IMG/VR virus record: IMGVR_UViG_3300031951_021456
Location: 62,001 to 126,000 of that record
Direction: 5' to 3' (one strand)
DNA: 64,000 bases
Numbering within the stretch: the stretch's first letter is position 1; every line of letters starts with the position of its first letter. Below are positions 10,172-59,744 of this stretch, in pieces. The position numbers and the translations under genes were made by a program. A model generated the notes under the pieces. That model searched no databases. It saw nothing but the letters and a program-made list of their open reading frames with translations, and had not been told where the DNA came from.

Positions 10172-11320
10172 ATGAATTTACTTAATGGCATTGTAGATAT
10201 ATTCCCATCAATAGAACCACAAAATTTTTTGGAAACTCCAAAAAGAATTAAACTTGGATTTGATCCAACAACAGATTTTTTACATTTAGGTCATGCTGTT
10301 CTTTTAAGAAAATTAAGGCAATTTCAAAATGAAAATCATACTCCTGTAATAATTATAGGTGACTTTACTGCAAGAATTGGAGATCCAACAGGAAAATCAA
10401 AAACTAGAAAACAATTAACCAAAGAAGAAGTAGAATTCAATACCAATGAATTTTTGAATACTCTTTCAAATTTTATTGACCCCGAAAAATCTGAAATTAT
10501 TTTTAATTCTAAACATTTAGAACAATTATCTCTATCTACAATTATACAATTACAATCATTGGTAACAGTAAATCAACTCCTAGCGAAAAGGGATTTTCAT
10601 CAAAGATTTGAATTACAAAGCCCTATCAGTTTGCATGAATTTATGTATCCACTACTTCAAGGATATGATAGTCATGTAATATCATCTGAAATAGAACTTG
10701 GAGGAATTGATCAAAAATTTAACATCTCAATGGGTAGAGATGTTCAAAGACATTTCAAAAATAAAAATGAACAAATTGGAATGTTAATGCCAATTTTATG
10801 TGGTACTGATGGTGCCAATAAAATGTCTAAAAGTTTGAATAATGCAATAAAAATTGATGAACATCCTTTAATAATGTTTTCTCAATTGGAAAAAATTCCA
10901 GATAATTTAGTAGATGAATATATTCTTCTACTCACCGACTGTAATTTGGGAGATTTTTCTCCAGATCCTAGAGAAAGGCAAAAACAAATGGCCTTTGAGA
11001 TTGTTTCAGAATTTTATGGTTCTGAAGTTGCTCTAAAGTCTATGAATGAATCTCAACAGATCGTTTTGTCTAATTCAAATATATCAGATGTCCCAGAGAT
11101 AGTTGTTTCACATTTGCAGTTTCCATTACCTCTTGCAACTTTATTGAGAGAAACTAAATTATCAGATAGTTCATCTGCAGCAAGAAGATCAATTCGTTCA
11201 GGTTGTATTAAATTAGATGGGATTAAAATTACAGATGAAAATATTATGGTTGATATAAATGATATTGAAAATAAAATTATAAGAATGTCAAAGAACTCTT
11301 TTCATCGTTTTGTCATGTGA
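10172..11320 (+). CDS. tyrS: Tyrosyl-tRNA synthetase
   Basis: GFDPT..LHLGH (HIGH), IGDFTARIGDPTG, YPLLQGYD, ELGGIDQKFN, KMSKS and a C-terminal S4-like ARRSIRSGCIKLDG. Confidence 0.95.
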   Translation: MNLLNGIVDIFPSIEPQNFLETPKRIKLGFDPTTDFLHLGHAVLLRKLRQFQNENHTPVIIIGDFTARIGDPTGKSKTRKQLTKEEVEFNTNEFLNTLSNFIDPEKSEIIFNSKHLEQLSLSTIIQLQSLVTVNQLLAKRDFHQRFELQSPISLHEFMYPLLQGYDSHVISSEIELGGIDQKFNISMGRDVQRHFKNKNEQIGMLMPILCGTDGANKMSKSLNNAIKIDEHPLIMFSQLEKIPDNLVDEYILLLTDCNLGDFSPDPRERQKQMAFEIVSEFYGSEVALKSMNESQQIVLSNSNISDVPEIVVSHLQFPLPLATLLRETKLSDSSSAARRSIRSGCIKLDGIKITDENIMVDINDIENKIIRMSKNSFHRFVM

Positions 11321-26085: not shown

Positions 26086-27630
26086 ATGTCACTTAAAATT
26101 TCCGAAAAAGCTAATCTTAATTATCTTGCAAAAGTTGTAAAACTAACAAATCTTAGAAAGCATCCAAATGCAGATAAATTACAGATAACCACTATTGATG
26201 GAAATAATATCATTACTGGCTTAGATGCTAAGGATGGTGATCTTTATGTGTATTTTTCTCTTGAAAGTTCAATCAATTTGAATTATATTTCATTTTCAAA
26301 TGGATTTAGGGAAAGCTCTTTAAATACTAATAAAGAAGTTGTTGGATTTTTTGAACCAAGAGGTAGAGTGCGGGCGATCTCTCTTCGGGGTGAAAAATCA
26401 TGTGGATATATTTGTCCAGTAAAAAATATCAATGAATGGCTTAATACCTTTACGTCTTTCAATATTACTGAAGAACATCAAGATGTAGAATTTGATATGA
26501 TTTGTGATACGGTAATGTGCGAAAAATATATAAATCGTGAAGCACTTCTTAAAATCTTAAAGGCCAATAAAACTCCAAAGGGTATTAAAAAATTAGCAAA
26601 AGAAACAAAGCTAATTGAAGGTCAATTCGCATTTCATGTTGATACTGCACATCTTCAAAAATATATCTATAAAATCAATCCGCATGATATCATTCATATT
26701 TCCAAAAAGCTTCATGGAACTTCTGCTATTGTTGGAAATATTTTGTGTAAGCGTAAATTATCGCTTAAAGATTCCATTGCAAGATTTTTTGGGGTAAATG
26801 TAAATGAAACAGAATATCAATTGATTTGGTCTTCTAGAACAGTTGTAAAGAATGGCAACTATTATTTGTCTTGGCAAGAAACCCTCTGGAAAAATTTTCT
26901 ATATTATCTCAGCAGTTACAAAAAACCATTTGAATCTTGGGTATCCTTGATTTTAGCTGAAGGTGACCAGAAAAGAGAAGAATTTTTTGGTGATTTGCAA
27001 TATCATAGATCAACTCCTTTGCAACTCTATAAAGATTTGCAAGAGTGGAGTAAAATTATCAAAAATCCACAAACATCTAATCATTATTATTCATATGATA
27101 TTTGGAGGGATGTTGCTATCCAGCTTGAAGATTTTCTTTATAAAGGAATGACATTTTATTGTGAAGTTGTTGGTTATACAAAGGAAGGAGCATATCTTCA
27201 AAAGGGTTATGACTATGGTTGCGATCTAGGAAACTTTGCAATTTACATCTATCGCATCACATATACAAATCCTTCAGGGAAGATATTTGAATTTTCAACT
27301 CAGCAAGTGAAGGCATATTGCAATAAACTTGGCCTAAACATGGTCCCAGAACTTTATTATGGGAGAGCAAAAGACCTATTTGACATTCCTGTAGATGATA
27401 ATTGGCATGATAATTTTATTGAATTAGTTAGCCAGAATTATCTTGAAAAGGATTGTGACATGTGTGTAAATAAAGTTCCAGATGAAGGTATTGTACTCCG
27501 TAAGGAAGATATTGACATTGAACCATACAAATATATAAGTTTTGCATTTAAACTGCGAGAAACAAAAAATGCAGATAATGGCGAAATTGATCTAGAAACA
27601 ATTGAATCTGAACAGTTAGGTGATGCATAA
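26086..27630 (+). CDS. RNA ligase, DRB0094/Rnl5-like with N-terminal tRNA-binding OB domain
   Basis: KHPNADKLQ (OB), RVRAISLRGEKSCG, SKKLHGTS (motif I), YCEVVG, VPELYYG and DEGIVLR. Confidence 0.8.
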   Translation: MSLKISEKANLNYLAKVVKLTNLRKHPNADKLQITTIDGNNIITGLDAKDGDLYVYFSLESSINLNYISFSNGFRESSLNTNKEVVGFFEPRGRVRAISLRGEKSCGYICPVKNINEWLNTFTSFNITEEHQDVEFDMICDTVMCEKYINREALLKILKANKTPKGIKKLAKETKLIEGQFAFHVDTAHLQKYIYKINPHDIIHISKKLHGTSAIVGNILCKRKLSLKDSIARFFGVNVNETEYQLIWSSRTVVKNGNYYLSWQETLWKNFLYYLSSYKKPFESWVSLILAEGDQKREEFFGDLQYHRSTPLQLYKDLQEWSKIIKNPQTSNHYYSYDIWRDVAIQLEDFLYKGMTFYCEVVGYTKEGAYLQKGYDYGCDLGNFAIYIYRITYTNPSGKIFEFSTQQVKAYCNKLGLNMVPELYYGRAKDLFDIPVDDNWHDNFIELVSQNYLEKDCDMCVNKVPDEGIVLRKEDIDIEPYKYISFAFKLRETKNADNGEIDLETIESEQLGDA

Positions 27631-27673: not shown

Positions 27674-28042
27674 GTGAAAATCTCCACCACCCATCAAAAA
27701 TTTGCAGATCAGTTAGGCGACCAAACTGCTCTAGAATACCCTGAACGTTTTCTAGGACCTAATTGGAAGGATGTTTTGAACTTCTGGATTTATTTGGACA
27801 CTTTAAGCGCCGAAAAGCGTAAGATAGTTAGTAAGCGCTATAGTGCTTTAGCTGATACTTCAGTAATAAGTTTAACTCATGGTTCTCACTGGGTTCTTAC
27901 ATGGAATGCTGCTCAAGATATTATAGGTAATGAATGTGTATGGTCAGCTTTCCGGGTGATTGGGAGCAGTGTGAACATTGAACTCATCGCTTCACATAAA
28001 CTTGAGTCTCTTAAGTTTCTTCCCCTGTTTTTGAATTTATGA
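27674..28042 (+). CDS. MKIS-family paralog 7
   Basis: GTG start; conserved blocks. Confidence 0.85.
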   Translation: MKISTTHQKFADQLGDQTALEYPERFLGPNWKDVLNFWIYLDTLSAEKRKIVSKRYSALADTSVISLTHGSHWVLTWNAAQDIIGNECVWSAFRVIGSSVNIELIASHKLESLKFLPLFLNL

Positions 28043-28392
28043 AAATCTCTAGAACACATAAAAGATTTGCCGATCATTTAGATGACCAAACTGCTTTAGA
28101 ATACCCTGAACGATTTCTAGGACCCAATTGGAAAGATGTACTGAACTTTTGGATTTATTACGATACTTTGAGTGATGATGTTCTTAGGTTAATTATTAGG
28201 CGCCATCAGGCTATAGAGGATTTAAATTATGTAAAGAATCTTTCTTGGAATGCTGCTGAAAATACTATAGGTGAGTATTATACGCGGGTAGCTTATGATG
28301 TTACACATTCTCTTAGTTATTTAACCTGCGAACTCATTGGTTCACATAAGCTTGAGACTCTCAATTTTCTTCCTTTGTTTTTGAATTTATGA
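28039..28392 (+). CDS. MKIS-family paralog 8
   Basis: ATGA overlap; conserved blocks. Confidence 0.85.
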   Translation: MKISRTHKRFADHLDDQTALEYPERFLGPNWKDVLNFWIYYDTLSDDVLRLIIRRHQAIEDLNYVKNLSWNAAENTIGEYYTRVAYDVTHSLSYLTCELIGSHKLETLNFLPLFLNL

Positions 28393-30124: not shown

Positions 30125-30280
30125 AGTGTCCATTCTAAGTGAACTTTATTAAAATCTCTGCTAAGTTAATAAAACCTCCTGAGGAATTCTAAATTTATGA
30201 TTCGCGCTCCTCCCAATCAACCAACTGTCCACTCTCTCACCCAAACTCACAGATCTCTGTTATCTTATAGGGGTGAGAGA
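30123..30280 (+). promoter_or_regulatory. Tandem class A half-site promoters of the Ubl operon, with a 10-bp inverted repeat
   Basis: aagtgtcca near 30124 with taagtt downstream; aactgtccac 30223-30232 with tatctt 30261-30266; tctctcaccc 30233-30242 and gggtgagaga 30271-30280. Confidence 0.6.
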
Positions 30281-30324
30281 CAAAAACTCTCCACAAACCC
30301 TCAACTCTACAAAATAACTGCATT

Positions 30325-30594
30325 ATGTCTTCTTTCTCTAACGCTCTTCAGCAACAAGATCCTTCTGCTGTTGTGTATCTGGATGTGAACGGTAACGTGA
30401 TCGCTCTGATGCCCAACGAATACGAGGGGAAAACCCTGACCCAACTTTTCACCGACTTTGGTTCCCGACTCGGCACTAACGTTTCCCGCGTTACAAGCTT
30501 CACTATCAATGGTCAACAAGTGGGCGCCACCGCCGTTGTCCGCCCAGGCGAAACCGTTCGCGGCAACGTTCAAACTGACAGCAAGCAAGCCTGA
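30325..30594 (+). CDS. Ubiquitin-like (beta-grasp) protein
   Basis: Beta-beta-alpha-beta-beta pattern (VVYLDV, VIAL, GKTLTQLFTDFGSRLG, SFTING, VVRPGETVR) with a free tail TDSKQA; first gene of a JAB-E2-E1 operon. Confidence 0.75.
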   Translation: MSSFSNALQQQDPSAVVYLDVNGNVIALMPNEYEGKTLTQLFTDFGSRLGTNVSRVTSFTINGQQVGATAVVRPGETVRGNVQTDSKQA

Positions 30595-30610: not shown

Positions 30611-31774
30611 TTGACCATGAGTCTACCTAGTTTCTGGGTAGACTCTATTTCTTTATCTTTTATTATGACATCTTCTAGATTCCTAAATCTTTATGCTAAT
30701 TATCATGGTGATCAAACCGTTCTTGAGAATCCTGAGCAAGTTCTAGGACCAAATTGTAAAAGTATTTTAGACTTTTGGGAGAGCCTAGATGAAAGTGTTC
30801 TTAGAACTGAATTTGATGGTTCATTTGAGATCTATTCCTGTCCATGGGGGAAATATCTTAGGCCTTGCCGGGATCCTCTAGCTAATTCAGTAATAACAAA
30901 AGAAAATTATGATAAGTTTGAAGTCGCAGAAAATGTCAATAAAATTCCATCAGATATTTGGACTGCATGGATTCTTCTCTGTTTTCATTTTGTGGATAAA
31001 GTTCCAACAAAAATGGAAGTTCTTGTTCGTTTCTTGAGAAATGAAGAAAATCCATCTCAATTTATGGCAGTCGTCCCTAAACAATCTGTTACAGGGGTAT
31101 CAGTAAAAGTTGGAAACTTTAATGATTGCTGTAACCTCTTAACTGGAGAAAAATACACATCATATCCACCAGAAGGTTGGATTCCATGTGGTTCTAGTCA
31201 TAGCCATAATACATTGTTTTCTGGCTGGAGTGATGAAGATAATAAATATGAAATTCCAGATCCAGGGATTCATATTACGGTTGGGGAAATCAACTCAACA
31301 AAACGAACATATCAAATTGCCGCTTCAGTGACAGGAAATTTGAAAAGATTCAAGATTAATTATACTCATCTCATTGATACAACATTTGATGAAGACTCTA
31401 AATTTCATAAAAATGTATTAGAATATGTTGAAATTAGTACAACAAAATATCAATCATGGCCTACGAATGTTAATTATAAACCCCTGCAGCGAAAACTTCC
31501 TCCAGCCAAAACAACTTTCAGCAATATTGAAGAATATCGTGAGTTTATGTATGGGGAATTCACTGATTTTGATGCCTATAAAAAAATTAGTAGAGATCCA
31601 TTTCATTATAGCGATTCGTTTAGATATGTAACTAATACATTAGAGGTTCATCAAATAGCTGATAGCATTGAAGATTTTATCAAAGAGAATCGCAATGATG
31701 CTGATCAACTAGAAGAGTTGCAAAATACTCTGTCTTCATGTCTTATTGATCTTCAACTTGAACTAAACTCATGA
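30611..31774 (+). CDS. JAB/JAMM/MPN+ metalloprotease (deubiquitinase-like) with N-terminal MKIS-family segment
   Basis: E136...H197-S-H199-x7-S207-x2-D210 (GSSHSHNTLFSGWSDED), VVPKQSV and PGIHITVG. Numbering is from the TTG at 30611; the true start may be ATG 30617 or 30665. Confidence 0.9.
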   Translation: MTMSLPSFWVDSISLSFIMTSSRFLNLYANYHGDQTVLENPEQVLGPNCKSILDFWESLDESVLRTEFDGSFEIYSCPWGKYLRPCRDPLANSVITKENYDKFEVAENVNKIPSDIWTAWILLCFHFVDKVPTKMEVLVRFLRNEENPSQFMAVVPKQSVTGVSVKVGNFNDCCNLLTGEKYTSYPPEGWIPCGSSHSHNTLFSGWSDEDNKYEIPDPGIHITVGEINSTKRTYQIAASVTGNLKRFKINYTHLIDTTFDEDSKFHKNVLEYVEISTTKYQSWPTNVNYKPLQRKLPPAKTTFSNIEEYREFMYGEFTDFDAYKKISRDPFHYSDSFRYVTNTLEVHQIADSIEDFIKENRNDADQLEELQNTLSSCLIDLQLELNS

Positions 31775-32592
31775 CATCCATTCTTTTTCCCGAAACGCTT
31801 CCTTCTGGGCTTGTTAATCTATTTCCACCAAAAATCAGTGCAATTTCATATAATTATTCTGGAGATGGATTGCTTTTAAGGGCTCATATGAAAGATAAAT
31901 TTAGACGTTTGCAACAAGATGGTGAATATGCTGCAAACTTTCTTATGTGTCCCATGATTTTTCAGCAAACTTTGGAAATTAATAACCCTGAAACTAGATT
32001 TCAAGTAAGAGAAACTCCCAGCCATTATCCAGAAACCAGAGTATATTTACAGGGAACAAAAATAGTAGATAATAATATTTTTACAACAGTAAAGGATAAT
32101 ATGTCAAATGTATGTGATAGCACTTTTTTAGTTTGCTGGGGTGGAAATTTTAATGTAAAGAGTATAAAAACAATGAAAGGATTTATTGATCTTTTCTTTA
32201 ATAGTTATTTTAATGGTGATTATACTTCACCAAAGGCATTAAGGACATCTGAAGAAAATTGTATTGAGATTAGAGGTGAAATTGCAGAAGATTCTTTTGA
32301 GGCCACTAATTATAAGCTCATTTCAAAGGATGCAAATGCAATCTATACTATTCATAGGCATGATAATCCTTCCATTTTCTTTTGGCTTAAATCTGCCGGA
32401 TTTAATCCAATTGTAGAAAATTCTGACATTATGTTAGTTCCACTTAAGAGTGTTATCCTAACGGATAATGGAATTGATTATCCTGGATTTGTAACACCTA
32501 TTGATCTTTGCCGTAAGAAATGGTTCATTCTCCCTGATGGGAAATTTGTTGGGCAGATGTCCAGTTCACAGACTGTCCGTAACCCCACGTAA
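31771..32592 (+). CDS. Prokaryotic E2 ubiquitin-conjugating-like enzyme (family D / PRTRC protein B-like)
   Basis: SNVCDSTFLVC122WGGN followed by LFFNSYFNGDY matches the N[VT]..[IV]CWG...FF.S.FN.D pattern; ATGA overlap with the JAB gene. Confidence 0.75.
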   Translation: MTSILFPETLPSGLVNLFPPKISAISYNYSGDGLLLRAHMKDKFRRLQQDGEYAANFLMCPMIFQQTLEINNPETRFQVRETPSHYPETRVYLQGTKIVDNNIFTTVKDNMSNVCDSTFLVCWGGNFNVKSIKTMKGFIDLFFNSYFNGDYTSPKALRTSEENCIEIRGEIAEDSFEATNYKLISKDANAIYTIHRHDNPSIFFWLKSAGFNPIVENSDIMLVPLKSVILTDNGIDYPGFVTPIDLCRKKWFILPDGKFVGQMSSSQTVRNPT

Positions 32593-32639: not shown

Positions 32640-33353
32640 ATGTTTGATAAAGTTTATCTGCTCGGAATTGGCGGGGGTGGAAGTCACCTTGCTCCAGTTC
32701 TCGTCCAAACTCTCCGCTCACACCCAAAAACTTCATATAGTACAATCACCTTTATTGATGGTGATAAATTTGAGAAAAAAAACCAGAGCCGACAGCTTAT
32801 GGAGCCTAGCGATGTTGGCCTTAACAAGGCTACTTCAGTTGCTAGAATCTGTGAAGATCGTGGATTTTCTGATGTATATTCAATTGAAGATTATGCAAAC
32901 TTTGAGAATCTAGTTCCACTTCTTGAAGATGCTCAGTCTCCACTTGTGATTGCATGTGTAGATAACAATGCAACCAGGGCAGCTATCATTGATGCGATCC
33001 AAAAAGTTTGCATTGATGATAACAAGAAGAACTTCTTCTTTATCACACCTGGTAATAGTGATGCGACCGAAGACCCTAAGGGTCAAGTTTGTTGGTGGGG
33101 GGCAATCAACGGGAAAACTTATGGTCAAAACCCCAAAGAATATGATCTAGACATTCAAAATCCTGATGATTTTATTCCAAGGATTGGTGGATGTATGGAT
33201 ATGAGCGAATCTCATCCACAAGTTCTTTCAGCAAATCATCTTGCGGTGTCTCTCACCCTTTCTCTCGTTCAAACACTGTTGGATGAGAAATTGGATCATC
33301 GTAAGTCTCAAATTCGCTTCAACTGCTACAATCTTACCACTGCCATTTCCTGA
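32640..33353 (+). CDS. E1/ThiF-family adenylating enzyme
   Basis: LLGIGGGGS (GxGxxG), IDGDKFEKKNQSRQ, GLNKA, ACVDN, PGN..GQV and candidate catalytic C185 (GGCMDMSESHPQ..AN). Confidence 0.92.
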   Translation: MFDKVYLLGIGGGGSHLAPVLVQTLRSHPKTSYSTITFIDGDKFEKKNQSRQLMEPSDVGLNKATSVARICEDRGFSDVYSIEDYANFENLVPLLEDAQSPLVIACVDNNATRAAIIDAIQKVCIDDNKKNFFFITPGNSDATEDPKGQVCWWGAINGKTYGQNPKEYDLDIQNPDDFIPRIGGCMDMSESHPQVLSANHLAVSLTLSLVQTLLDEKLDHRKSQIRFNCYNLTTAIS

Positions 33354-33358
33354 AAATC

Positions 33359-33829
33359 ATGTCTGACAATCCTCAAAACGTTAAAGTCAATGCAAGAGTT
33401 CTTAAATTTGATCAACTTCTTCAAGGCATTGAAGAATACGCAAGTTCAATCCGTACTCGTACAGATTCTGCTCTGAGCGAGGATAACATCTGCTCCCGTA
33501 TTGAAGAGATCTTTGGGGAAGAAGAATCTTTCAATAGGCTAGTTGCAGCTATTGTTACTCGTATTGGCATTAATAGCATCGTTAATGGTGTTGTTCGCCA
33601 AACGCAAGGAGACATTAACGAGAAGATTGATGCTACCATTAGCTCAAAACTCTCAGAAGAACCCCTACTTTCCACTGTAAATAGGCTCATTCAAATGCAC
33701 GCCAATGGTCAGGAAATTTCAATTCCTGATATCAATCAAAATCGCAAAATTGAAGACATTCCATTGGATAGTCCAGAAAATATTGCAGAGGTCTGTAGGC
33801 TTCTAGCTGGGGCTGACGCAATTCTCTGA
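33359..33829 (+). CDS. Alpha-helical hypothetical protein, last gene of the Ubl operon
   Basis: Starts 5 nt after the E1 stop and ends just before the terminator. Confidence 0.7.
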   Translation: MSDNPQNVKVNARVLKFDQLLQGIEEYASSIRTRTDSALSEDNICSRIEEIFGEEESFNRLVAAIVTRIGINSIVNGVVRQTQGDINEKIDATISSKLSEEPLLSTVNRLIQMHANGQEISIPDINQNRKIEDIPLDSPENIAEVCRLLAGADAIL

Positions 33830-33839
33830 TTCATTTTGA

Positions 33840-33864
33840 GGGGAGAATTAATCTCCCCCTTTTT
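33840..33864 (+). terminator. Intrinsic terminator closing the Ubl operon
   Basis: ggggag-aattaat-ctcccc-cttttt. Confidence 0.65.
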
Positions 33865-33874
33865 GTTTAAAACC

Positions 33875-34255
33875 ATGAAAATCTCCATTTCACATCAACA
33901 TTTTGCAAATTGGTTAAAGGCTCAAGATGCTCTAACTAATCCAGAAAAATATCTTGGCCCCAAATGGAAAGATGTCCTGAACTTTTGGATTTATTTGGAT
34001 TCAGAAGAGTCTGAGTGGGATGAGCGGCGTTGCACCGCTACTCTGCGTGCCGCTTATAATATTATAGGCTCTGAGTGGGATGAGCGGCGTTGCATCGCTA
34101 CTCTGCGTGCCGCTTATAATATTATAGGCTCTGAGTATGGATATGCAGCTTTTAATGCTCATGTTGGTTATGCTGAAGGGCATGCAACCTGTGAACTTAT
34201 CGCTTCACATAAACTTGAGTCTCTCAGTTTTCTTCCCCTGTTCTTGACCCCATGA
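33875..34255 (+). CDS. MKIS-family paralog 9 with internal 20-aa duplication
   Basis: ATG 33875; SEWDERRC(T/I)ATLRAAYNIIG twice; stop codon inside the dyad at 34252. Confidence 0.85.
   Translation: MKISISHQHFANWLKAQDALTNPEKYLGPKWKDVLNFWIYLDSEESEWDERRCTATLRAAYNIIGSEWDERRCIATLRAAYNIIGSEYGYAAFNAHVGYAEGHATCELIASHKLESLSFLPLFLTP
34010..34136. repeat. 60-bp tandem duplication (1 mismatch) plus 7-bp partial third copy
   Basis: 34010-34069 versus 34070-34129. Confidence 0.95.
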
Positions 34256-34571: not shown

Positions 34572-35508
34572 ATGTCTTTAAGTACCATTGAACGTCTATC
34601 TCCATTTTCTTCAAGTTTCACTTGGGATGATTACACAAATGAACTCTATCGGTTTTCTGATGATTATGGATATCTTTCGGTTGAACAGATGAAAAATGAA
34701 ATAGAACGGTTTAGGATGTTCAGTTTTACTGATAAAATTAATTTTACAATGACTGTTGAGGATTTCGTTGACTTCTTATTTGATGCAAACTCCAATCACA
34801 CCTGATCCTAATTATCTTTACAACTTATATGAAGAAGAAGAACCAGAGGACCAACCGGAAGATGCCGAGTTTGATGATGAATCAAACTGAAGACATTTTT
34901 CTAAATGATGATTTTGGTTCACAGCTTCATGAATTTTTAGATCCAGAACTTTTACAAATTTTAGACAATTATGAATTTGACGAAAACTGACTTTAATGAT
35001 ATTCTCAAAACCCTTGATGAAGCTAAAACCGCAGATGAACTCTTAACTGCACTTAATAAAATTGGACACAATGAAAACTGTCCCAATGAGGCTTTACAAG
35101 ATCAACCAATGACCTATTCTTGAAATGTAACTACCACTTACACCATGATCAATCTCAAACCAACTGAAAATACCATGAGCACCTCTGAAGAGGCTGCTCT
35201 TATTCTCTCTGATATTTTTGATGGAGATCTTGTCGCACAACAAGCAGCCATTGAAGAATTCTCTCTGTTTACTGATGAAGACATTTTGGACCAAGAAGAT
35301 GCTCTTTATGATCGTTATCTCCCTGTCAGGGAGGTTTCTTCTATCCAAGAGTAATTCCCGCTATAGCATTCATGCAAATGGGTGTATAGTAAATGTAGGA
35401 GACTTAAATTCAGCCTACATGATTGCATACAGAATGGCCAGCTCTTTTGGCCATTCTTTCATTTATGACAATCTTTTCAATAAAACAATTGATGAGTATT
35501 TTGAATGA
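34572..35508 (+). other. Cluster of very small, mostly acidic ORFs (34572-34805, 34783-34890, about 34874-34990, about 35174-35354, others)
   Basis: Examples: MQTPITPDPNYLYNLYEEEEPEDQPEDAEFDDESN and MSTSEEAALILSDIFDGDL... Confidence 0.5.
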
Positions 35509-35909
35509 TCTATTCTAAAAGACATTTAGCATTTTCTGAGTTATTTCCATCAGCATTAACACAACCAGAAGAATTTATAGGTCGTAACTGGAAAAATGTT
35601 TTAAATATTTGGATTTTCCTGGATACTATAGATTGTGCTCAATTACATAGAATATATTCAATCTGCTTTCATCCATGTTATGATTATAAATATAGATCAC
35701 TATTGTCTCAATATTCTTTTGAAGAATGCGAATATAGCAGTGATATTTATAATTTAACTCCTAGTGGATTTGATTATCTTGTATTAGAGCTAATATTAGA
35801 ACAAACATTGATGGAAAATCAAATACCCTTGAGGTATCTTCCAAATCTATGCGATTTTATGCCACTTTTTAAATCGTCCATGGATGGCTCAAATAGCTTT
35901 CAGCCATAG
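35505..35909 (+). CDS. MKIS-family paralog 10 (divergent)
   Basis: ALTQPEEFIGRNWKNVLNIWIFLDTI...LELI...YLP. Confidence 0.7.
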   Translation: MIYSKRHLAFSELFPSALTQPEEFIGRNWKNVLNIWIFLDTIDCAQLHRIYSICFHPCYDYKYRSLLSQYSFEECEYSSDIYNLTPSGFDYLVLELILEQTLMENQIPLRYLPNLCDFMPLFKSSMDGSNSFQP

Positions 35910-46028: not shown

Positions 46029-47287
46029 ATGGGGTTGATCCATAAGAAATCCTGATCAATGAGAGCTTGACAAACCACGCTCAAGCTCTTATAGTAAGAA
46101 AGTCAACCTCACTTGCACCATGGACAACAAGAGCATTCAAGTCGGTCGGTTGTGGACAGCTTCCCTAGCATGGAAAGATGCTGCAGAAGTATATTTAATT
46201 GCAGGAGATCTCAATAAGTATCGACACTGCAAGAAAGAACAGGCTGATCTTCTTTTGATGAGAGCAAAGATTCTTAAAGAGATTGCTGATGGAAATAATT
46301 CTCCTGATTATGTCTGGAAAGCTAAGATTTCCACATCAGCAGTGCAATTGCCCATAAGCAACACTGATCAATAAGAGCTTGACAGAATCTCAAAAATCCA
46401 TTAGTTTACCTTCATCCGCAACACTGATCATGAACAACAAGGAATTGTTTGAATCGCATTTGAACGAGGCATACATTGATTTATTTCAAAATGATGCAGA
46501 CTATTCTTATGCAGCAGCCAGAAAAACTCCTGCTGAATTGGCATCTTTAATGACAGTTTCTTTAGCCAGGGGTGAAGCCAATTTGGAAGGTGAGGGTATA
46601 ACAAGAGCCTGCAAAGCTGTAGGAATAAAGAAAACCCGTAAAGCAATTAAAGAATTTTTGAATAAGCCATAAAATCTAAAAGATAATTTTAGTCTTAACC
46701 CATTCAACACTCCAATGGAAAATCTTTTTGTCAACATCAACCGACGGTCTGATCCAGATTCACCTAAATGGGTTAGATTGAGTGAGATTCTTACATTTCA
46801 TGATACAATTTTCGGTGTTAGAGTAATTTGCAAGGGAGGACATAAGTTTACCGGAACATTGAAATCAAAATTTCTAATGCATGTAATTGCAAAAACTACA
46901 AATACTACATTGAATGATATTGACTATTCCATTTGATTAATGAAAATCATTAAATTAAGACATCTTTCGCAAAACTCACTCATGAATTATTCAATAGGGC
47001 ATTGGTATATGAAAGGTTGCCTTGCATGTTATAGAAATGCCTTTCTAAATGAAGAAATTTTTTATAACAAAGAGACTCTACTAATTTCTATTGAGAATGT
47101 GAAAAATTCTCGTAATAGTTATATTACAGAAGAGGCATATCAAACTGTTTTGAGACATTTTGAGGCTGGACTTCTTCTTTTTGAATGTCAAAATAAACCA
47201 TAAGCAACACTGATCATTCAATAGCTTGACAGCAGCTCAAAAACCCATTAACTTACTTTCATCCACATCAGGGAGGTTTCCCCGCTC

Positions 47288-47938
47288 ATGATTACTGAAT
47301 CTGAAGTCAATTCTGCGGTTTATACGCTTCTGCGGTCTAAGAATCTTGAGCATCTTAATGCTCATTCGGGGCTTATTGCCAGGATCAGGAGAGAATGGAA
47401 TTCTTTCAAGAAATCTGCAATAAGTCTAGGGTTTAACCCAGAAGAACACCGCTTAACTGCATACAATATTGCTGAAGGTGATCTATGGGATCATGCTGCA
47501 CATGACTGGATTTTAACTAGAGAAGGTTGTGGGTGTGGTTTCTGGGATGGTGATTGGGAAAAGAATATGGGAGAAAAGCTAACCGAATTGTCCAAGACTT
47601 TCGGGGAGTTGGATGTATATTCTGAACGGGGCTATGTTTATAGCGAGTTCCCATGTAATATCAATAAGATTGCAACTTATTGTTTTATTAAATATAAAAA
47701 CTTCAGCCAACGCGGGGCCAGCCTCATTCAATTCCCACAGAAAAACGCAACTTCATATCTGGTTAAATTACCTGAGATTGATAAACACTGGAGAAGGATT
47801 AACTGTAGATGTGTATCTATAGATGGTGGGTTTGAATTTATAGATTGGTGTCATGTGAAGGGAGAAAAAATTTGTCTAGGGAATATATTAGGTAGAATTT
47901 ATGTACCTGTAGATGATGTTGTTAAAGTTGAACTATAA
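47288..47938 (+). CDS. Two-domain hypothetical protein, paralog of 50279
   Basis: Shares SEVN.A, REW.SFK.SA..GF.PE.HR, AHDWI, INKIATYCF.KY and KLPEID..WRRI with 50279. Confidence 0.75.
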   Translation: MITESEVNSAVYTLLRSKNLEHLNAHSGLIARIRREWNSFKKSAISLGFNPEEHRLTAYNIAEGDLWDHAAHDWILTREGCGCGFWDGDWEKNMGEKLTELSKTFGELDVYSERGYVYSEFPCNINKIATYCFIKYKNFSQRGASLIQFPQKNATSYLVKLPEIDKHWRRINCRCVSIDGGFEFIDWCHVKGEKICLGNILGRIYVPVDDVVKVEL

Positions 47939-49616
47939 TGGATTCTAATCAATGGAGGCTTGACAGCGAGAGATAAACCCCTTACAGTAACAGAGTAATC
48001 CACCACACTCAAAACAATGTCAACAAAAAGAGAGCTTCAAAGTGAAATTGAAAGTTTGAAAAGAGACATAGATTGCATAACCAATAGAATTAAAGAAAGA
48101 GAAGAAGAATTATCTAAGTATTCAGCACCAGATCGCATTAGAGATGCTGATGTTGGTGAAACATTGGCAGATGGTTGTGTATTGATAGATTTTCTACGTG
48201 GCAAAGACCGAGCATGGGCAATTCTAGGCGCACCCGTAGAAACCATTCAGTACACTACGCTTAAAGATATGGATAAAATTAAAAAAGAATTATCATTAGG
48301 CCCAGAATGGTTTCTACCTACACACCAAATTGCTAAAAGTATTTGCATTGATCCTTGCCATTTTGAACTTCTCCCGGTGGGTGAGTATTGGACATCTATT
48401 TCTGAGAATGAATATATTCTCATTGCGGAGAATAACGCGCTTGTATTTGCCACCTTAAGATACGCGAATAACAACAATCTTTCTAGACTGGCTTGGTATT
48501 GTAAGATTGTTGAGTTTAGTGTGCATCCATCATACGATTATTTACCTTATTGATCTATAAGAACGACTTATCAATAAAAGCTTGACAAGCCATAATTCTT
48601 CCCCTATCATTAAAAAGTCTTCAACACTTGAATCAATGACTGATCAAACTGCTCGCCAGCGTGCAATCCATGCAGCTAACATGCAATGGGCTGCACACCT
48701 AAAGCGAACCGCTCAAAAAGCTGCTCAAGATGCAGATAAAGCTTCTCTAGCAGCCTCTCAAGCACATGACCGAGTAAACACTCTTCGTGCAGCATTAGCG
48801 GCTGCTCATGCTAATCTTCAAAGTTCAATAGCAGCAGCCATCACAACACAAGATATTTCAAATAATGCTAAGCTAAATGCCATAGATGCTCGTACAGATT
48901 ACCATACTTTTATGGATAGTATCAAATAATTGTATCATGAAAAACGGTTCATATTGGTCGGATAAAAGAGACATTCCAAGCGGAAAATATGGTAAGACTA
49001 AGCTGCCTGACTGTGAATGTACTGGTATATTTACATGTAGAGTCTGTTTAGATTATAGTATTATTAGGGACAAAATCTTTCCAAACTCATGAAAAGTTTT
49101 CACCAACAACTGGCAACATTCAAAGCTCTTGACAAACAAAAAAGAGAGAATCCTTTTCGTAAGGAATGGATAAATTCACAGTCTCTCCATTATACAGAAA
49201 GATGGAAAAAAGAAGCTGATATTATTAAAAGGTATGTTGAATTATCACGAGGAAAGTTTCCTGATTTTGTTCTAGAGAATTTTTATTGCTTAAAATATAT
49301 GATAACAGGGGAAGCTTTTAATCTTGGCTGGGGTTTTGAATGTAATAATGTAATTTATTGGAAAGATACAAAAAGAGAGATAATGGCTGAATGGATGGAT
49401 AGATATAATCACACATGCGATTATCTAGGACCAATTAAAAGAGTAACCATGCTGGAAAGTATGCTGTATAATAGATTCAATTTTATAGGGCCAATTGAAC
49501 GAAAAATCTTGCATGAAAGTATGCGGAGTGACTCATATGGAATTCTAATGCCTCAAGGTCTTGACAAAAGCACTTGAGACATTCTAGTATAAACAAGTAA
49601 TCCACAGAGGGTTCCC

Positions 49617-52600
49617 ATGGCTCCTATTCACTTCCACCGCGACAATAATTTGAAAGAAGTAATTGTTGCAACAAATAAAATCAATAAAGTATGTAATATT
49701 ATTCAACCGCAGATCATAGAAACTTTAAGACCTTTCAGGGGCAAAAAAATAATTAAGGTAACTCCTTATCGTACTCTAACGAGTAAAGTTTTTGAAGTTC
49801 TCAATCCAGTTTTAGAAGAATACCGAAAAACAATGGGAGGTATGTATATCTTGGATTATCAATCTAATTATAGTCTGTCTTTGAAAGTTCAGGTGCCGTA
49901 TAAATTGCATTATGATGATGGGGGGTTTCAAGGCAGTTTGTCTCATTTTCTTTATTTGGGTTTTTTGGAAAACAGTACTTACCTTAAGGACGAAGATCTA
50001 AAGTTATGTAAGAGTAAGGAAGATTATGATTTTGATGAAATTAAGTTGAAAATGGTGCAGCTTAAACAGTTGGAAGAACAATTTGATGCATTAAAGAGTG
50101 AATTATCGCGCTTCTTGCGATAAGGAATAGACCATATTACTCCCCGGTTTGCTAGTCTTACTGGGGATTTTTTGTGTTTAATGTTTTAATGTGACACTTT
50201 AAGAACTGGCACATTCTTAACCACCTTTCCGCCCTTACCTGCTGTAGGATAAACAAGCAAACAAAGGGAGGTTCCCCCGTGACTACACAATCTGAAGTTA
50301 ATGCTGCAATTGCAGCATTGTATATTTCCGATGAATTTGATGATAAAAAGGTTACTAAATCTCTAAACTCTCGTATAAAAAGAGAATGGTTATCATTCAA
50401 AGCTTCTGCTATAAATATAGGTTTTGACCCTGAAAAACATAGAACATTTACGCTAGATAAATCTAAAGAAGACTTATGGGGTTATGTTGCACATGACTGG
50501 ATAATGATTCGTAATTTGGGATTTTTAGACGGCCATTGGCAAAAAGATAAGGCAGAGAAATTAGCAGAAATTGCAAAATCTTTTGGCCGGTTGGAAGTAT
50601 TTCAACAGGGTGATTATATCTTTCCACGTTCAGATGAGTATATCAATAAGATTGCAACTTACTGCTTTCTTAAGTATAAAGAAGTGTCACACTCACATTT
50701 GAATAAAGATGGTTATGGTAAGACTTCATCGCCATATATGATTAAGTTACCCGAGATTGATAATCAATGGAGGAGAATATATTCTTTATGCTATTCTAAT
50801 ACATCAACCGAAATCATTACAATAAAAGGTGAAACATTATTATTGGGGAATCTATTATCGGATTTTTGTATAGCAGTTGGAGATACAGTTAAGATTAATT
50901 TGTAGGTATAACAAGCTCTCATAAGAGATGCTAATGCCTTAAGGGTTGACAGATCCCCTTAAGACATTCTAGTATAAACAAGTAATCCACAGAGGTTTTT
51001 ATGCACTCCCAACATCCAGCAATTATTGAATGTTTGAATAGTTTCAATTTTGAAAATGTTCACAAAATAATGGTACTTCTAGATTGGAAATATGCTATGC
51101 CTGCACCACCATATTATGCTGAGGTTCCTAATATAGAACGGCTGAAGGAATGCGCAGAATATCTATTGCGTCTATCTGTGCAGCATAGATGTGATTGGAG
51201 TAGTGGTGGATTTGAAGCGAAATATATTGTCGGGTGGGATGGTTTTGTTAAGCTTCGCTTATGCTTCGTGGCAGTTGATTGTCAGGTGAATTGTAAAGAA
51301 TAAGCTAGTCTTACTGGGGATTTTTTGTGCTTAATGTTTTAATGTGACACTTTAAGAACTGGCACAGTCTAGAGAACCATCCAGCCCTTAGCTGCTTTAT
51401 GATATGGAGGTATTCATCCAGGTATTTCATGGCTACGCCAGCATTCAAAACAAAAAAAGGTGACCTTACAGCTTATGCCTTGGCTTGTGGATATATTGAA
51501 AAGGTGGAAATTGGAGATGATATAATAGTTCTGCAAGCTTTGGATTGCCCTAATGTATATCTCGTTTCGTTGTGGGAAGGTAAATATAATTCCCATGATA
51601 AAGATTATCGCTTGCTAACTGATGCACGAAGAGAGTTTAAGAAGCTCGTCTCTATGAAAAAACGTGCTGACACTTTAAGAACTGGCACGTTCTCAACCAC
51701 CTTTCCGCCCTTAGCTGCTGTATGATGACAAGGTAAACAAAGGGAGGTTCCCACCATGCCCATCACAATCTATGAATTCGGTGAATTGTCAGATGAAGCA
51801 AAAAGCATTGCATTAAATACCTTTCGTTATATCAATGTTGACTGTAACTGGCATGAAACTGTATGCGAAGATGCAGAAGTAATCGGATTAAAGATTACAG
51901 AATTTGATATTGATAGAAATACCATAAAGGGACATTTGAAACAAGATTTTTTGGATGTATGTAGGCTAATAAGAAAAAATCACGGTAAAGATACGGAAAC
52001 AAGAGACACCGCCAAAAAGTATCTTAAAGAATATATTGCAGAATACTATCGTTATAGGGGCAATGATACACAAAATTTACCAGATTTGCTGAAAGGCTTC
52101 CAATGTGAAGATGAAGCAAAGGATATAGAGATAGATTTTGCCCTCGCACTTTTGGAGGATTATTTCATCATGTTGAGAAGAGAATATGAATATCTCACAT
52201 CTGATGAAGCAGTTAAAGAATCAATTGAATTAAATGAGATGAAATTTCTAGAGAATGGTAATGTGACATAAGCAGTGCTTATCAATAAAGGCTTGACAAT
52301 CCATATTCTTACCTGTAGTATTCTTTCATCCACATCAGGGAGGTTCCCACTATGTCTCAAATTCGTCTCACCGGCCTTGATCTATTGAAGCATCATAAAA
52401 GTCAACATGAAACAAGGCACTTAAAGGTGATGTTTGCTGGATATATTAAAGATGGATTTAAGCCATCATATACAGAATACTATTCAGCATTACTTCCACT
52501 AATGTTATGGAATAAAAAGTATGAAAATACAATGAACAATGGAGGTTCTAAAATTGTTCAAAGTCTAGTGACACATCTGGTGGCGGGTGCAGATTATCAG

Positions 52601-54743: not shown

Positions 54744-54765
54744 TAAAATGTGTTTTTAATCGTTT

Positions 54766-54920
54766 TTATTGATAATCATTCTCAATAAGGTGTTTTAAGT
54801 GTTTTATTGATCTTATTGATAATCATTCTCAATAAGGTGTTTTAAGTATATTGAAGGTCTTAAATGTTTTATTGATAATCATTCTCAATAAGGTATTTTA
54901 GGTATTTTAGGTATTTTAAG
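54766..54920. repeat. Three copies of the 23-bp near-palindrome TTATTGATAATCATTCTCAATAA (Fur-box-like), followed by ggtatttta repeats
   Basis: Copies at 54766-54788, 54813-54835 and 54869-54891. The core TGATAAT-C-ATTCTCA is one mismatch from the 7-1-7 Fur box. Confidence 0.9.
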
Positions 54921-55055
54921 TGTCTTATTGGTCTGATGATCTTAGCGGACTAGGACCACACACTCTAAGACACTCAAGGACAGAAGAAAAACCGGCACAA
55001 TAAAACCCACAGAACGATCATAACCGCTAAGATGTAAAAGTCATTCAATCATTCC

Positions 55056-59667: not shown

Positions 59668-59744
59668 GATCTTCTAATGCCCTTAAGGGTTGACAGATGC
59701 CTTAAAGCAATCTAGTATGAACAAGTAAACCAAGGGAGGTTCCT

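What the first reader, a model, noticed from the sequence alone, without database searches (positions are those of the whole stretch)
30325..30594. Ubl ends in ...DSKQA, not Gly, and has distinct codon usage
Seen: the last Gly is G80, inside the final strand; the tail ends K87-Q88-A89; the only lysines are K36 and K87. The gene is rich in C-ending codons (aac, ttc, acc, gcc), unlike its AT-rich neighbours. Established: canonical Ubls conjugate through a C-terminal Gly; I recall some CBASS Cap2 substrates ending in Ala. Inference: a highly expressed modifier with non-canonical Ala chemistry or JAB-dependent maturation, or a decoy that poisons host E1/E2 enzymes.
Basis: partly seen in the sequence, partly recalled or inferred. 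Interest (0 to 1): 0.62.

Follow-up and report, generated by a model that had tools for sequence, protein, structure and literature searches.

The report
Phage ubiquitin-like protein lacking terminal glycine
This is a real, probably heavily expressed ubiquitin-like protein that heads a jumbo phage's own E1, E2-like and JAB conjugation cassette; its relatives nearly all carry a reactive Lys-Gly end, but this phage and its closest kin have replaced the glycine with Gln, Arg or Asn while keeping every enzyme active site.

Summary
ORF 30325-30594 (+) encodes 89 aa ending D-S-K-Q-A. The last Gly is G80, inside the predicted final strand, and K36 and K87 are the only lysines. C-ending codons make up 76% of two-fold pyrimidine codons, against 19% in 42 other genes of the window.

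It is a beta-grasp Ubl: AF2 pLDDT 81, with best PDB folds SUMO, ubiquitin and ISG15. It heads a cassette of Ubl, JAB, a divergent E2-like protein and a short ThiF-type E1. That cassette recurs in more than 15 phage contigs with 35-63% GC.

The would-refute test is half met. Of 91 distinct family members, 79 have Gly after a near-invariant Lys (tail [ST][ED][ST]-K-G), followed by 0-2 extra residues in most. Seven have Ala. Only the window (and one unrelated member) has Gln.

The allele is neither an error nor decay:
- It occurs in five independent assemblies.
- It is 99.3% identical in DNA where the neighbouring JAB and E1 genes are 94.5%.
- Sister phages end K-R, K-N and K-G.
- All E1, E2-like and JAB catalytic residues are intact.

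High GC and C3, an own promoter-like box and a terminator hairpin are family-wide. This argues for high expression rather than recent transfer. Whether Gln88 or Ala89 can be activated remains untested.

The parts
30224..30275 (+). Promoter-like element upstream of the Ubl gene: an ACTGTCCAC box, a spacer of about 25 nt, then TGTTATCTTATAGGGGTG
   Evidence: Both boxes are invariant or nearly so upstream of the Ubl gene in 8 homologous loci. The ACTGTCCAC box occurs 17 times in the window against 6.8 expected, and several copies sit in intergenic gaps followed by a TAtnATTA-like -10. Function is inferred, not shown.
30325..30594 (+). Ubl gene: 89 aa beta-grasp protein with tail T84-D85-S86-K87-Q88-A89
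   Evidence: ORF. AF2 gives pLDDT 81 and beta-beta-alpha-beta-beta-beta topology. Foldseek top hits are SUMO2/3, ubiquitin, ISG15 and NEDD8. There are 85 representative homologues.
30586..30591 (+). Codons CAA GCC (Gln88, Ala89), at the place where relatives have GGC or GGC GCC (Gly, or Gly-Ala)
   Evidence: Position 88 is G in 79, A in 7, Q in 2, R in 1 and N in 1 of 91 family members.
30619..30655 (+). Intrinsic-terminator-like hairpin plus T-run directly after the Ubl gene
   Evidence: Stem of 12 pairs and a TATTTCTTTA tail. An equivalent hairpin with a T-run follows the Ubl gene in most homologous loci shown (none evident in L007). The listed ORF 30611.. starts at TTG and runs through the hairpin. 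The likely JAB start is ATG 30665.
30665..31774 (+). JAB/JAMM metallopeptidase, 369 aa, with an N-terminal 45-aa extension borrowed from a local paralogue family
   Evidence: Invariant E118, H179-x-H181, S189 and D192 in 11 homologues. Homologues hit Pfam Prok-JAB.
31771..32592 (+). 273-aa protein, probably a divergent E2-like carrier (N113 ... C122-W123) with a C-terminal SH3/Tudor-like domain
   Evidence: Invariant N113, C122 and W123. AF2 pLDDT is 90. Foldseek finds no match. VIA-align matches residues ~13-180 to about 20 UBC E2 structures at Z 4.2-5.0, and residues 225-273 to SH3-like folds at Z about 5-5.8. One homologue has a weak Prok-E2_D hit. Inconclusive.
32640..33353 (+). Short (237 aa) ThiF-type E1-like adenylating enzyme with invariant Cys185
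   Evidence: Pfam ThiF 1.4e-11. Invariant G9xG11G12xG14, D40, D42, N48, R51, Q52, K63, D108, N109, R113 and C185 in 20 homologues. PDB sequence hits are TcdA, SAE2, MccB, UBA5, UBA1 and Cap2.
33359..33829 (+). 156-aa protein of unknown function that follows the E1 gene in most related cassettes
   Evidence: Homologues lie directly after E1 in L015, L017, L018, L028, L029, L001 and L011. None was found in L024, the closest relative. A role in the system is not established.

Best explanation
The ORF encodes the modifier of a phage-borne ubiquitin-like conjugation cassette: Ubl, JAB peptidase, E2-like carrier and a short ThiF-type E1.

In the family as a whole, a flexible tail of fixed length ends in Lys-Gly, followed by 0-2 disposable residues in most members. 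By analogy with BilA/BilC, the proposed cycle is as follows. JAB trims any extra residues. E1 adenylates the exposed carboxylate and takes it onto Cys185. The E2-like Cys122 receives it and passes it to a target amine. JAB can also reverse the conjugate.

The Ubl gene is its own small transcription unit, with a promoter-like box, strongly C-ending codons and a terminator. This would make the substrate in large excess over the three enzymes.

The window's protein is a K-G-A to K-Q-A variant. It sits in a small clade where the reactive position drifts (G, N, R, Q) while the rest of the tail, the whole protein and all enzyme active sites stay conserved. I therefore think the system is still in use and that this clade tolerates, or has adapted to, a non-Gly end. 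The most likely route is Gln88 exposed after removal of Ala89.

Shown: the fold, the cassette, the family consensus, replication of the allele, its conservation, and the codon bias. Inferred: high expression, JAB trimming, the thioester relay, and tolerance of Gln.
For: - Fold: beta-grasp.
- Cassette: Ubl-JAB-X-E1 is conserved in many phage contigs, including high-GC ones.
- Family tail: K at position 87 in 86 of 91 members and G at position 88 in 79 of 91, with 0, 1 or 2 trailing residues in 44, 16 and 18 of the K87 members. The tail has no length variation.
- Precedent: BilA has a conserved Gly plus up to 9 residues, and BilC cuts Gly97|Ala98 (10.1101/2023.09.26.559546).
- Allele is real: SKQA is present in 5 independent assemblies, and the Ubl DNA is 99.3-99.6% identical where JAB and E1 are 94.5%.
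- Clade pattern: the E1 tree gives the clade (L028 K-N, L029 K-G),(L015 K-R,(window, L024 K-Q-A)) with support 95/96, and L017 K-G-A outside it.
- Enzymes intact: catalytic residues of E1, E2-like and JAB are invariant in the non-Gly phages too.
- Possible co-adaptation: window and L015 share changes at positions invariant elsewhere. These are E1 T13G in the Gly-rich loop, E1 R23Q/S, and JAB F188W next to the JAMM Ser189.
- Expression signals: codon bias, terminator and promoter-like box are family-wide.
Against: - In the Cap2 system, changing the C-terminal Gly to Ser, Val, Arg or Trp abolishes thioester formation and conjugation; only Ala is tolerated (PMC10097602). A bulky Glu also kills defence (10.1101/2022.03.31.486616). 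By that precedent Gln88 should be a poor E1 substrate.
- 87% Gly plus 8% Ala across the family says the ancestral E1 wants a small residue.
- The shared E1 and JAB changes in window and L015 stem from one lineage. They may be plain phylogenetic signal, and L028 (K-N) lacks the E1 changes.
- The E2 assignment rests on weak structural scores (Z about 4-5).
- The E1-Ubl complex prediction gave no verdict.
- No expression or conjugation data exist.
Confidence: 0.55

Rival explanations
1. Conjugation-dead variant. In the window's clade the Ubl has lost its reactive Gly. It now acts non-covalently, for example by binding or blocking its own E1 or JAB or some other partner. The enzymes are retained for another substrate or have not yet decayed.
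For: Cap2 and Bil-type E1s need Gly or Ala (PMC10097602; 10.1101/2023.09.26.559546). Position 88 is the most variable tail position in this clade (G, N, R, Q), as expected once the constraint is lost. JAB and E1 show moderately relaxed substitution patterns against L024 (32 nonsynonymous to 25 synonymous codons, and 15 to 19).
Against: The Ubl itself is the best-conserved gene of the cassette. The tail motif [TS]-D-x-K is kept. All catalytic residues of the three enzymes are invariant in these phages. No other Ubl-like substrate gene is seen in the cassette.
Confidence: 0.25
2. Direct Ala chemistry. Ala89 is itself the activated C-terminal residue, without JAB trimming, on a tail one residue longer than usual.
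For: Seven family members have Ala at the reactive position, two of them as the last residue. Cap2 accepts a C-terminal Ala (PMC10097602).
Against: Tail length from the last strand to position 88 does not vary in the family. K-G-A is a common precursor-type ending (P0029, P0049, P0063, P0072, P0091, L017). In E. aridi BilA the equivalent trailing Ala blocks adenylation (10.1101/2023.09.26.559546). The sister phages end K-R and K-N with no Ala.
Confidence: 0.12
3. Decoy that poisons host E1/E2 enzymes such as Bil or Cap2. The non-reactive end traps host enzymes.
For: Only the general idea that a Ubl with a blocked end can occupy an E1 site, as seen for BilA Ala98 in crystals (10.1101/2023.09.26.559546).
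Against: The gene always travels with its own E1, E2-like and JAB genes. Most family members have a normal reactive Gly. There is no sequence similarity to BilA or CD-NTase tails. PADLOC finds nothing for the Ubl.
Confidence: 0.03
4. The odd codon usage marks a recent horizontal acquisition from a GC-richer donor rather than high expression.
For: Gene GC is about 0.51 in a window of 0.35.
Against: The Ubl gene is richer in GC and in C-ending codons than its locus in the related phages, with the contrast weaker in L005 and L010. This includes phages of 61-63% GC, where C3 reaches 0.64-0.73. The bias is specifically C over T in two-fold codons. The gene tree follows the cassette. The bias is therefore an old, maintained trait.
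Confidence: 0.05

Closest known systems
BilABCD (bacterial ISG15-like) anti-phage ubiquitination systems (10.1101/2023.09.04.556158; 10.1101/2023.09.26.559546)
   Same: The same four parts: beta-grasp Ubl, E2, JAB deubiquitinase and E1. The Ubl has a conserved Gly followed by a few disposable residues that the JAB removes (Gly97|Ala98 in E. aridi). The family here shows the same K-G(+0-2) pattern, and K-G-A endings are common.
   Different: - The cassette is carried by lytic-looking jumbo phages in a DNA-metabolism region, not by bacterial defence islands.
- E1 is 237 aa with a single adenylation domain. It has no inactive adenylation domain and no separate CYS domain.
- The E2-like protein has no Foldseek match and carries an extra SH3-like domain.
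- Only a weak PADLOC BilD hit (5.8e-07) and none for the other three proteins.
- The window's Ubl lacks the universally conserved Gly.
Type II CBASS Cap2/Cap3 (PMC10097602; 10.1101/2022.03.31.486616)
   Same: A homodimer-type short E1 domain with its catalytic Cys close to the adenylation site. A JAB partner. The reactive C-terminal residue is Gly or, less often, Ala, the same G/A split as in this family (79 G, 7 A).
   Different: Cap2 is an E1-E2 fusion, and its substrate is a CD-NTase tail, not a beta-grasp protein. No CD-NTase or effector gene is present here. In Cap2 systems bulky C-terminal residues abolish conjugation.
ThiF/MoeB with ThiS/MoaD, and MccB/PaaA-type E1-like enzymes
   Same: Single-domain E1-like adenylating enzymes of similar size. 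MccB and TcdA are among the best PDB sequence matches. MccB activates a non-Gly (Asn) C-terminus.
   Different: Those systems have no E2 and no JAB partner. ThiS and MoaD end in Gly-Gly and carry sulfur. MccB has an N-terminal peptide-clamp domain and acts on a heptapeptide. The matches cover only the Rossmann part, at E 1e-6 to 1e-5.
Phage tail assembly Ubl (TAPI) with JAB-NlpC/P60 TAPK (PMC1779556)
   Same: A phage-encoded beta-grasp protein with a C-terminal Gly next to a JAB peptidase.
   Different: TAPI/TAPK lie in the tail module and have no E1 or E2. Here the cassette has E1 and an E2-like gene and lies among replication and nucleotide-metabolism genes.

Membership tests
Ubiquitin-like beta-grasp modifiers | Beta-grasp fold | tested here: met
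   AF2 pLDDT 81 with strands 17-21, 24-28, 56-61, 64-66 and 77-82 and helix 38-49. Foldseek top hits are SUMO2/3, ubiquitin, ISG15 and NEDD8, with target-normalised TM mostly 0.55-0.68 and E about 1e-3.
Ubiquitin-like beta-grasp modifiers | Flexible C-terminal tail ending in Gly (or Gly plus a removable extension) | tested here: not met
   The window ends K87-Q88-A89. Family position 88 is Gly in 79 of 91 members. The feature is met by the family but not by this allele.
Ubiquitin-like beta-grasp modifiers | Genomic linkage to an E1-like adenylating enzyme | tested here: met
   ThiF-type E1 at 32640-33353. The linkage is conserved in every related locus long enough to show it.
Ubiquitin-like beta-grasp modifiers | Covalent attachment to targets through the C-terminus | not testable with these tools
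   This needs MS or biochemistry. The complex prediction gave no verdict.
BilABCD | Operon of Ubl, E2, JAB and E1 | tested here: inconclusive
   Ubl, JAB and E1 are present. The fourth gene is only weakly E2-like (VIA Z 4.2-5.0 to about 20 UBC structures; one weak Prok-E2_D hit; nothing in Foldseek).
BilABCD | E1 with an inactive plus an active adenylation domain and a mobile CYS domain | tested here: not met
   E1 is 237 aa and matches only one ThiF domain. The BilD architecture is taken from 10.1101/2023.09.26.559546.
BilABCD | Universally conserved Gly in the Ubl followed by up to 9 residues | tested here: not met
   The window has Gln at that position. Most relatives meet the feature.
BilABCD | Profile match to Bil proteins | tested here: inconclusive
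   PADLOC gives BilD 5.8e-07 over residues 29-126 of E1 only. Ubl, JAB and X have no hits.
CBASS Cap2/Cap3 | E1-E2 fusion acting on a CD-NTase C-terminus | tested here: not met
   The genes are separate and no CD-NTase is in the cassette. Cap2 matches are weak.
JAMM/MPN+ metallopeptidases | Glu ... His-x-His-x7-Ser-x2-Asp motif | tested here: met
   E118, H179, H181, S189 and D192 are invariant in 11 homologues. Homologues hit Pfam Prok-JAB.
UBC/E2 fold | UBC fold with a catalytic Cys a few residues after a conserved Asn | tested here: inconclusive
   N113 and C122 are invariant and 9 residues apart. Structural similarity is only middling. No residue-level superposition was available.
E1 superfamily (ThiF/MoeB/Uba) | Gly-rich nucleotide loop, the Arg/Gln and Asp residues of the adenylation site, and a Cys for the thioester | tested here: met
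   G9xG11G12xG14, R51-Q52, K63, D108-N109, R113 and C185 are invariant. Pfam ThiF is above its cut-off.
MccB-type peptide adenylating enzymes | N-terminal peptide-clamp domain and a short peptide substrate ending in Asn | tested here: not met
   The match covers only the Rossmann part (query positions 5-74 or 7-134; MccB residues about 115-235). The E1 has no extra N-terminal domain. The substrate candidate is an 89-aa beta-grasp protein.

The most novel reading that the evidence does not exclude
A small clade of jumbo-phage Ubl systems has evolved E1 and JAB enzymes that work on a bulky C-terminal residue (Gln, Arg or Asn) instead of Gly or Ala. Hints are E1 Gly-loop T13G, E1 R23Q/S and JAB F188W. 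This would be ubiquitin-like conjugation without the small-residue rule. Alternatively, a C-terminal amide residue may be used for MccB-like chemistry rather than a thioester relay. More broadly, the whole cassette would be a phage-owned protein-tagging system used against host or rival-phage proteins.
Probability: 0.15. Interest if true: 0.8.

Novelty: new variant of a known kind. Interest (0 to 1): 0.6.

Why it matters
Ubiquitin-like conjugation in prokaryotes is currently known mainly as a bacterial anti-phage weapon (Bil, Cap2/Cap3). In my literature searches I found no description of a complete Ubl/E1/E2-like/JAB cassette owned by lytic jumbo phages.

This family recurs in phages from 35% to 63% GC, so phages seem to tag proteins too. 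The targets could be host defences, rival phages or their own proteins.

The family offers a compact, single-domain E1 and an E2-like protein with no clear structural relative.

The window's clade is a natural experiment on the rule that the activated residue must be Gly or Ala. Either the rule is broken here, or a Ubl has been kept for a non-covalent job. Both outcomes can be tested with simple biochemistry.

Tried and rejected
- Pfam, PHROGs and PADLOC found nothing for the Ubl.
- Megablast of 10 kb and tblastn of the Ubl against GenBank phages found nothing useful.
- The word-index protein search found only two Ubl relatives. The full HMM scan was needed.
- Complex prediction on E1 plus Ubl gave no verdict (median score 0.20, mark 0.32). 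It counts neither for nor against binding.
- Foldseek found no match for the E2-like protein.
- hhalign of that family against the 323-aa gene of the bacterial relatives showed no similarity.
- Maturation at G80 is rejected. G80 lies inside the last strand and is not conserved in the family (G 41, A 32, V 9).
- An RNA element in the C-rich leader is rejected. Rfam gave only a sub-threshold chance hit, and RNAalifold found no consensus pairs. The conserved blocks look like a promoter.
- The antisense ORF 30307-30588 is rejected as a gene. It is codon-aligned and open only because the sense gene avoids TTA, CTA and TCA; it is broken in L007 and L010.
- Sequencing error is rejected.
- The alignment-based viral scan with the 60-sequence Ubl alignment failed for lack of a conserved stretch. 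A sub-family alignment worked.

Full report
**1. The observation**

ORF 30325..30594 on the + strand encodes 89 residues ending ...V-R-G-N-V-Q-T-D-S-K-Q-A. G80 is the last glycine. K36 and K87 are the only lysines. The final codons are AAG CAA GCC TGA.

The gene stands out in composition:
- GC is about 0.51, peaking at 0.55, in a window of 0.35.
- Third-position C is 0.40, against 0.10 in the next two genes.
- In two-fold pyrimidine-ending codons, 16 of 21 end in C, against 19% in 42 long ORFs (Fisher p = 3.5e-8). The next highest gene reaches 0.46.

A slightly longer antisense ORF (30307..30588) exists. It is exactly codon-aligned with the sense frame and stays open only because the sense gene uses no TTA, CTA or TCA codons. 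It is interrupted in two homologues.

**2. What the gene is**

AlphaFold2, run on a 60-sequence alignment, gives a beta-grasp fold with pLDDT 81. Strands are at 17-21, 24-28, 56-61, 64-66 and 77-82, with a helix at 38-49. Residues 83-89 form a floppy tail.

Foldseek's best PDB matches are SUMO2/3, ubiquitin, ISG15, NEDD8 and TGS domains. E is about 1e-3 and target-normalised TM is mostly 0.55-0.68.

The window belongs to a 248-kb IMG/VR contig, so this is a jumbo phage. Almost all genes are on one strand, among helicases, a primase-like gene, an RNA ligase and a phosphoesterase.

**3. The cassette**

Three genes follow the Ubl:
- **JAB/JAMM peptidase.** The likely start is ATG 30665. E118, H179-x-H181, S189 and D192 are invariant in 11 homologues.
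- **A 273-aa protein.** N113 and C122-W123 are invariant. It is modelled confidently (pLDDT 90). It has no Foldseek match. With VIA-align, residues ~13-180 hit about twenty UBC E2 structures at Z 4.2-5.0, and residues 225-273 hit SH3/Tudor-like folds. One homologue weakly hits Prok-E2_D. I call it probably E2-like but unproven.
- **A 237-aa ThiF-type E1.** All adenylation-site residues and Cys185 are invariant in 20 homologues. Its PDB sequence matches are spread thinly over TcdA, SAE2, MccB, UBA5, UBA1, PaaA and Cap2. PADLOC gives only weak BilD and Cap2 hits.

The order Ubl, JAB, X, E1 recurs in more than 15 distinct phage contigs. These include two of 61-63% GC.

**4.

A profile of eight cassette Ubls, searched against 1.84 billion representatives, found 85 proteins. 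With the loci, that makes 91 distinct sequences.
- The residue aligned with K87 is Lys in 86.
- The next residue is Gly in 79, Ala in 7, Gln in 2 (the window and the unrelated P0032), Arg in 1 and Asn in 1.
- Among members that keep K87, 44 stop at that residue, 16 have one more residue and 18 have two more.
- The tail does not vary in length.
- G80 is not conserved (G 41, A 32, V 9), so it is not a maturation site.

This is the pattern described for BilA: a conserved Gly followed by up to nine residues, with BilC cutting Gly97|Ala98 (10.1101/2023.09.26.559546). The Gly/Ala split also matches Cap2 substrates (PMC10097602).

K-G-A is a frequent ending in the family. The window's K-Q-A is therefore most simply a Gly-to-Gln replacement in that background. 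The codons are AAA GGC GCC in L017 and AAG CAA GCC in the window.

**5. Not an error and not decay**

The same ending occurs in four further assemblies from other samples. Against the 35-kb relative L024, the Ubl gene differs at 2 of 270 bases. JAB and E1 are each 94.5% identical.

The E1 tree places the window in a supported clade (95/96): (L028 K-N, L029 K-G),(L015 K-R,(window, L024 K-Q-A)). L017 (K-G-A) falls outside it. So the reactive position has changed at least twice in this clade. The rest of the tail ([TS]-D-x-K) is kept.

All catalytic residues of E1, E2-like and JAB remain invariant in these phages.

Window and L015 share changes at positions that are invariant in all Gly-type cassettes:
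- E1 T13G, in the Gly-rich loop.
- E1 R23Q/S.
- JAB F188W, next to the JAMM serine.

This fits co-adaptation of the pockets. It stems from a single lineage, however, so it is weak evidence.

**6. Codon usage and expression**

The Ubl gene is richer in GC and in C-ending codons than its own locus in the related phages (less markedly in L005 and L010), including the high-GC ones where C3 reaches 0.64-0.73. It is followed by a hairpin plus T-run in most loci shown (none evident in L007).

Upstream lies a conserved pair of boxes: ACTGTCCAC, about 25 nt, then TGTTATCTTATAGGGGTG. The first box recurs at other intergenic sites of the window.

Together these indicate an old, maintained trait of a separately transcribed, heavily translated gene. 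They do not indicate recent transfer. High expression is an inference; no expression data exist.

The family is also lysine-poor. The median is 3.1% and the mode is two Lys, against 7.3% in the window's proteins. That would limit self-conjugation.

**7. Mechanism and rivals**

- **Best reading (0.55).** This is a phage-owned modifier that is still in use. JAB trims Ala89, and E1, the E2-like protein and JAB handle a Gln end that this clade tolerates.
- **Main rival (0.25).** The clade's Ubl is conjugation-dead and acts non-covalently. In Cap2 systems Gly-to-Ser, Val, Arg or Trp abolishes thioester formation and conjugation (PMC10097602), and Gly-to-Glu abolishes defence (10.1101/2022.03.31.486616).
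- **Direct use of Ala89 (0.12).** This is disfavoured by the fixed tail length and by sister phages ending K-R and K-N.
- **Decoy for host enzymes (0.03) and horizontal transfer as the cause of the codon bias (0.05).** Both have little support.
- The complex prediction gave no verdict.

**8. Comparison and novelty**

The parts list matches Bil. The E1 architecture, the E2-like fold, the carrier (lytic jumbo phages) and this allele's missing Gly do not. I file it as a new variant of a known kind, not as a Bil member.

My paper searches found no description of such a phage cassette. The older phage Ubl-JAB pair (TAPI/TAPK) lacks E1 and E2 (PMC1779556).

Distant cellular relatives exist in Planctomycetota, Verrucomicrobiota and CPR MAGs. 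Their E1 is 25-32% identical to the phage E1. Their Ubl ends A-G-E-K-G plus an extension. In the two loci examined (L047, L062) the order is AAA+ ATPase with a proteasomal OB domain, Ubl, an unknown 320-aa gene, JAB, E1.

Noticed in passing
L047:1131-5720, L062:1046-5711 and about 15 further genome-contig loci (L035-L065): Bacterial MAGs (Planctomycetota, Verrucomicrobiota, CPR and others) carry distant relatives of the cassette. In L047 and L062 the order is a proteasomal-type AAA+ ATPase with an OB domain, a Ubl ending A-G-E-K-G plus 0-40 residues, an unknown ~320-aa gene, JAB, then E1. The phage E2-like protein has no detectable homologue there.
   Followed up: partly
window 47271-59744: The motif GGGAGGTTCCC occurs 13 times against 0.7 expected, always on the + strand and in the sites checked a few bases before a start codon. 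Most genes in the first 47 kb have no Shine-Dalgarno-like sequence at all (5 of 34). This suggests two translation or regulation regimes in one phage.
   Followed up: partly
window 12752, 22638, 25440, 28847, 30224, 34266, 36685 (+) and 60766 (-): ACTGTCCAC-type boxes (17 against 6.8 expected), several of them in intergenic gaps and followed after ~25-30 nt by a TAtnATTA-like element. This is a candidate phage promoter class, and the Ubl gene carries one.
   Followed up: partly
window 27674-28392, 33836-34255, 35505-35909 and the first 45 codons of 30665-31774: A multi-copy family of ~120-140-aa proteins (N-terminus M-K-I-S-x-x-H-Q-x-F-A ... E-R-F-L-G-P-N-W-K-D-V-L-N-F-W). It has several copies per phage in the related loci examined (seven or more hits in L018). 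Its N-terminal module is fused to the window's JAB protein and that of its 94%-identical relative L024 but is absent from the other JAB homologues.
   Followed up: partly
window 34010-34136: A perfect-looking 60-nt tandem duplication (2.1 copies, 98% match) inside paralogue 33836-34255. It duplicates a 20-residue block and raises local GC to 0.48.
   Followed up: yes
window 33359-33829: A fast-evolving 156-aa gene follows E1 in most related cassettes but is missing from L024, the 94%-identical relative. It could be an accessory or target protein of the system.
   Followed up: partly
window 31771-32592 compared with L001, L005-L011 and L018: The E2-like proteins of the more distant phages carry a 70-100-residue Cys-rich insertion (C-x2-C ... 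C ... C-P-x-G, probably Zn-binding). It is absent from the window, L015, L017, L028 and L029.
   Followed up: no
window 10172-11320 and 26086-27630: The phage encodes a full tyrosyl-tRNA synthetase (Pfam tRNA-synt_1b, 4e-67) but no tRNA gene in this window. It also encodes an RNA ligase with an OB-fold domain.
   Followed up: no
window 30233-30243 and 30270-30279: An inverted repeat (CTCTCACCC / GGGTGAGAG) brackets the conserved TGTTATCTTATA box. L001 seems to have a different but also complementary pair (GACCCC / GGGGTC). It may be an operator. No RNA consensus structure was found.
   Followed up: partly
P0055, P0061, P0073, P0099 (L023:158-2281): Very long bacterial proteins (707-1661 aa) match the Ubl profile 4-14 times each. 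The one examined (P0061, L023) has faint MucBP-type Pfam hits, suggesting a surface protein. They are probably beta-grasp repeat arrays unrelated to conjugation.
   Followed up: partly
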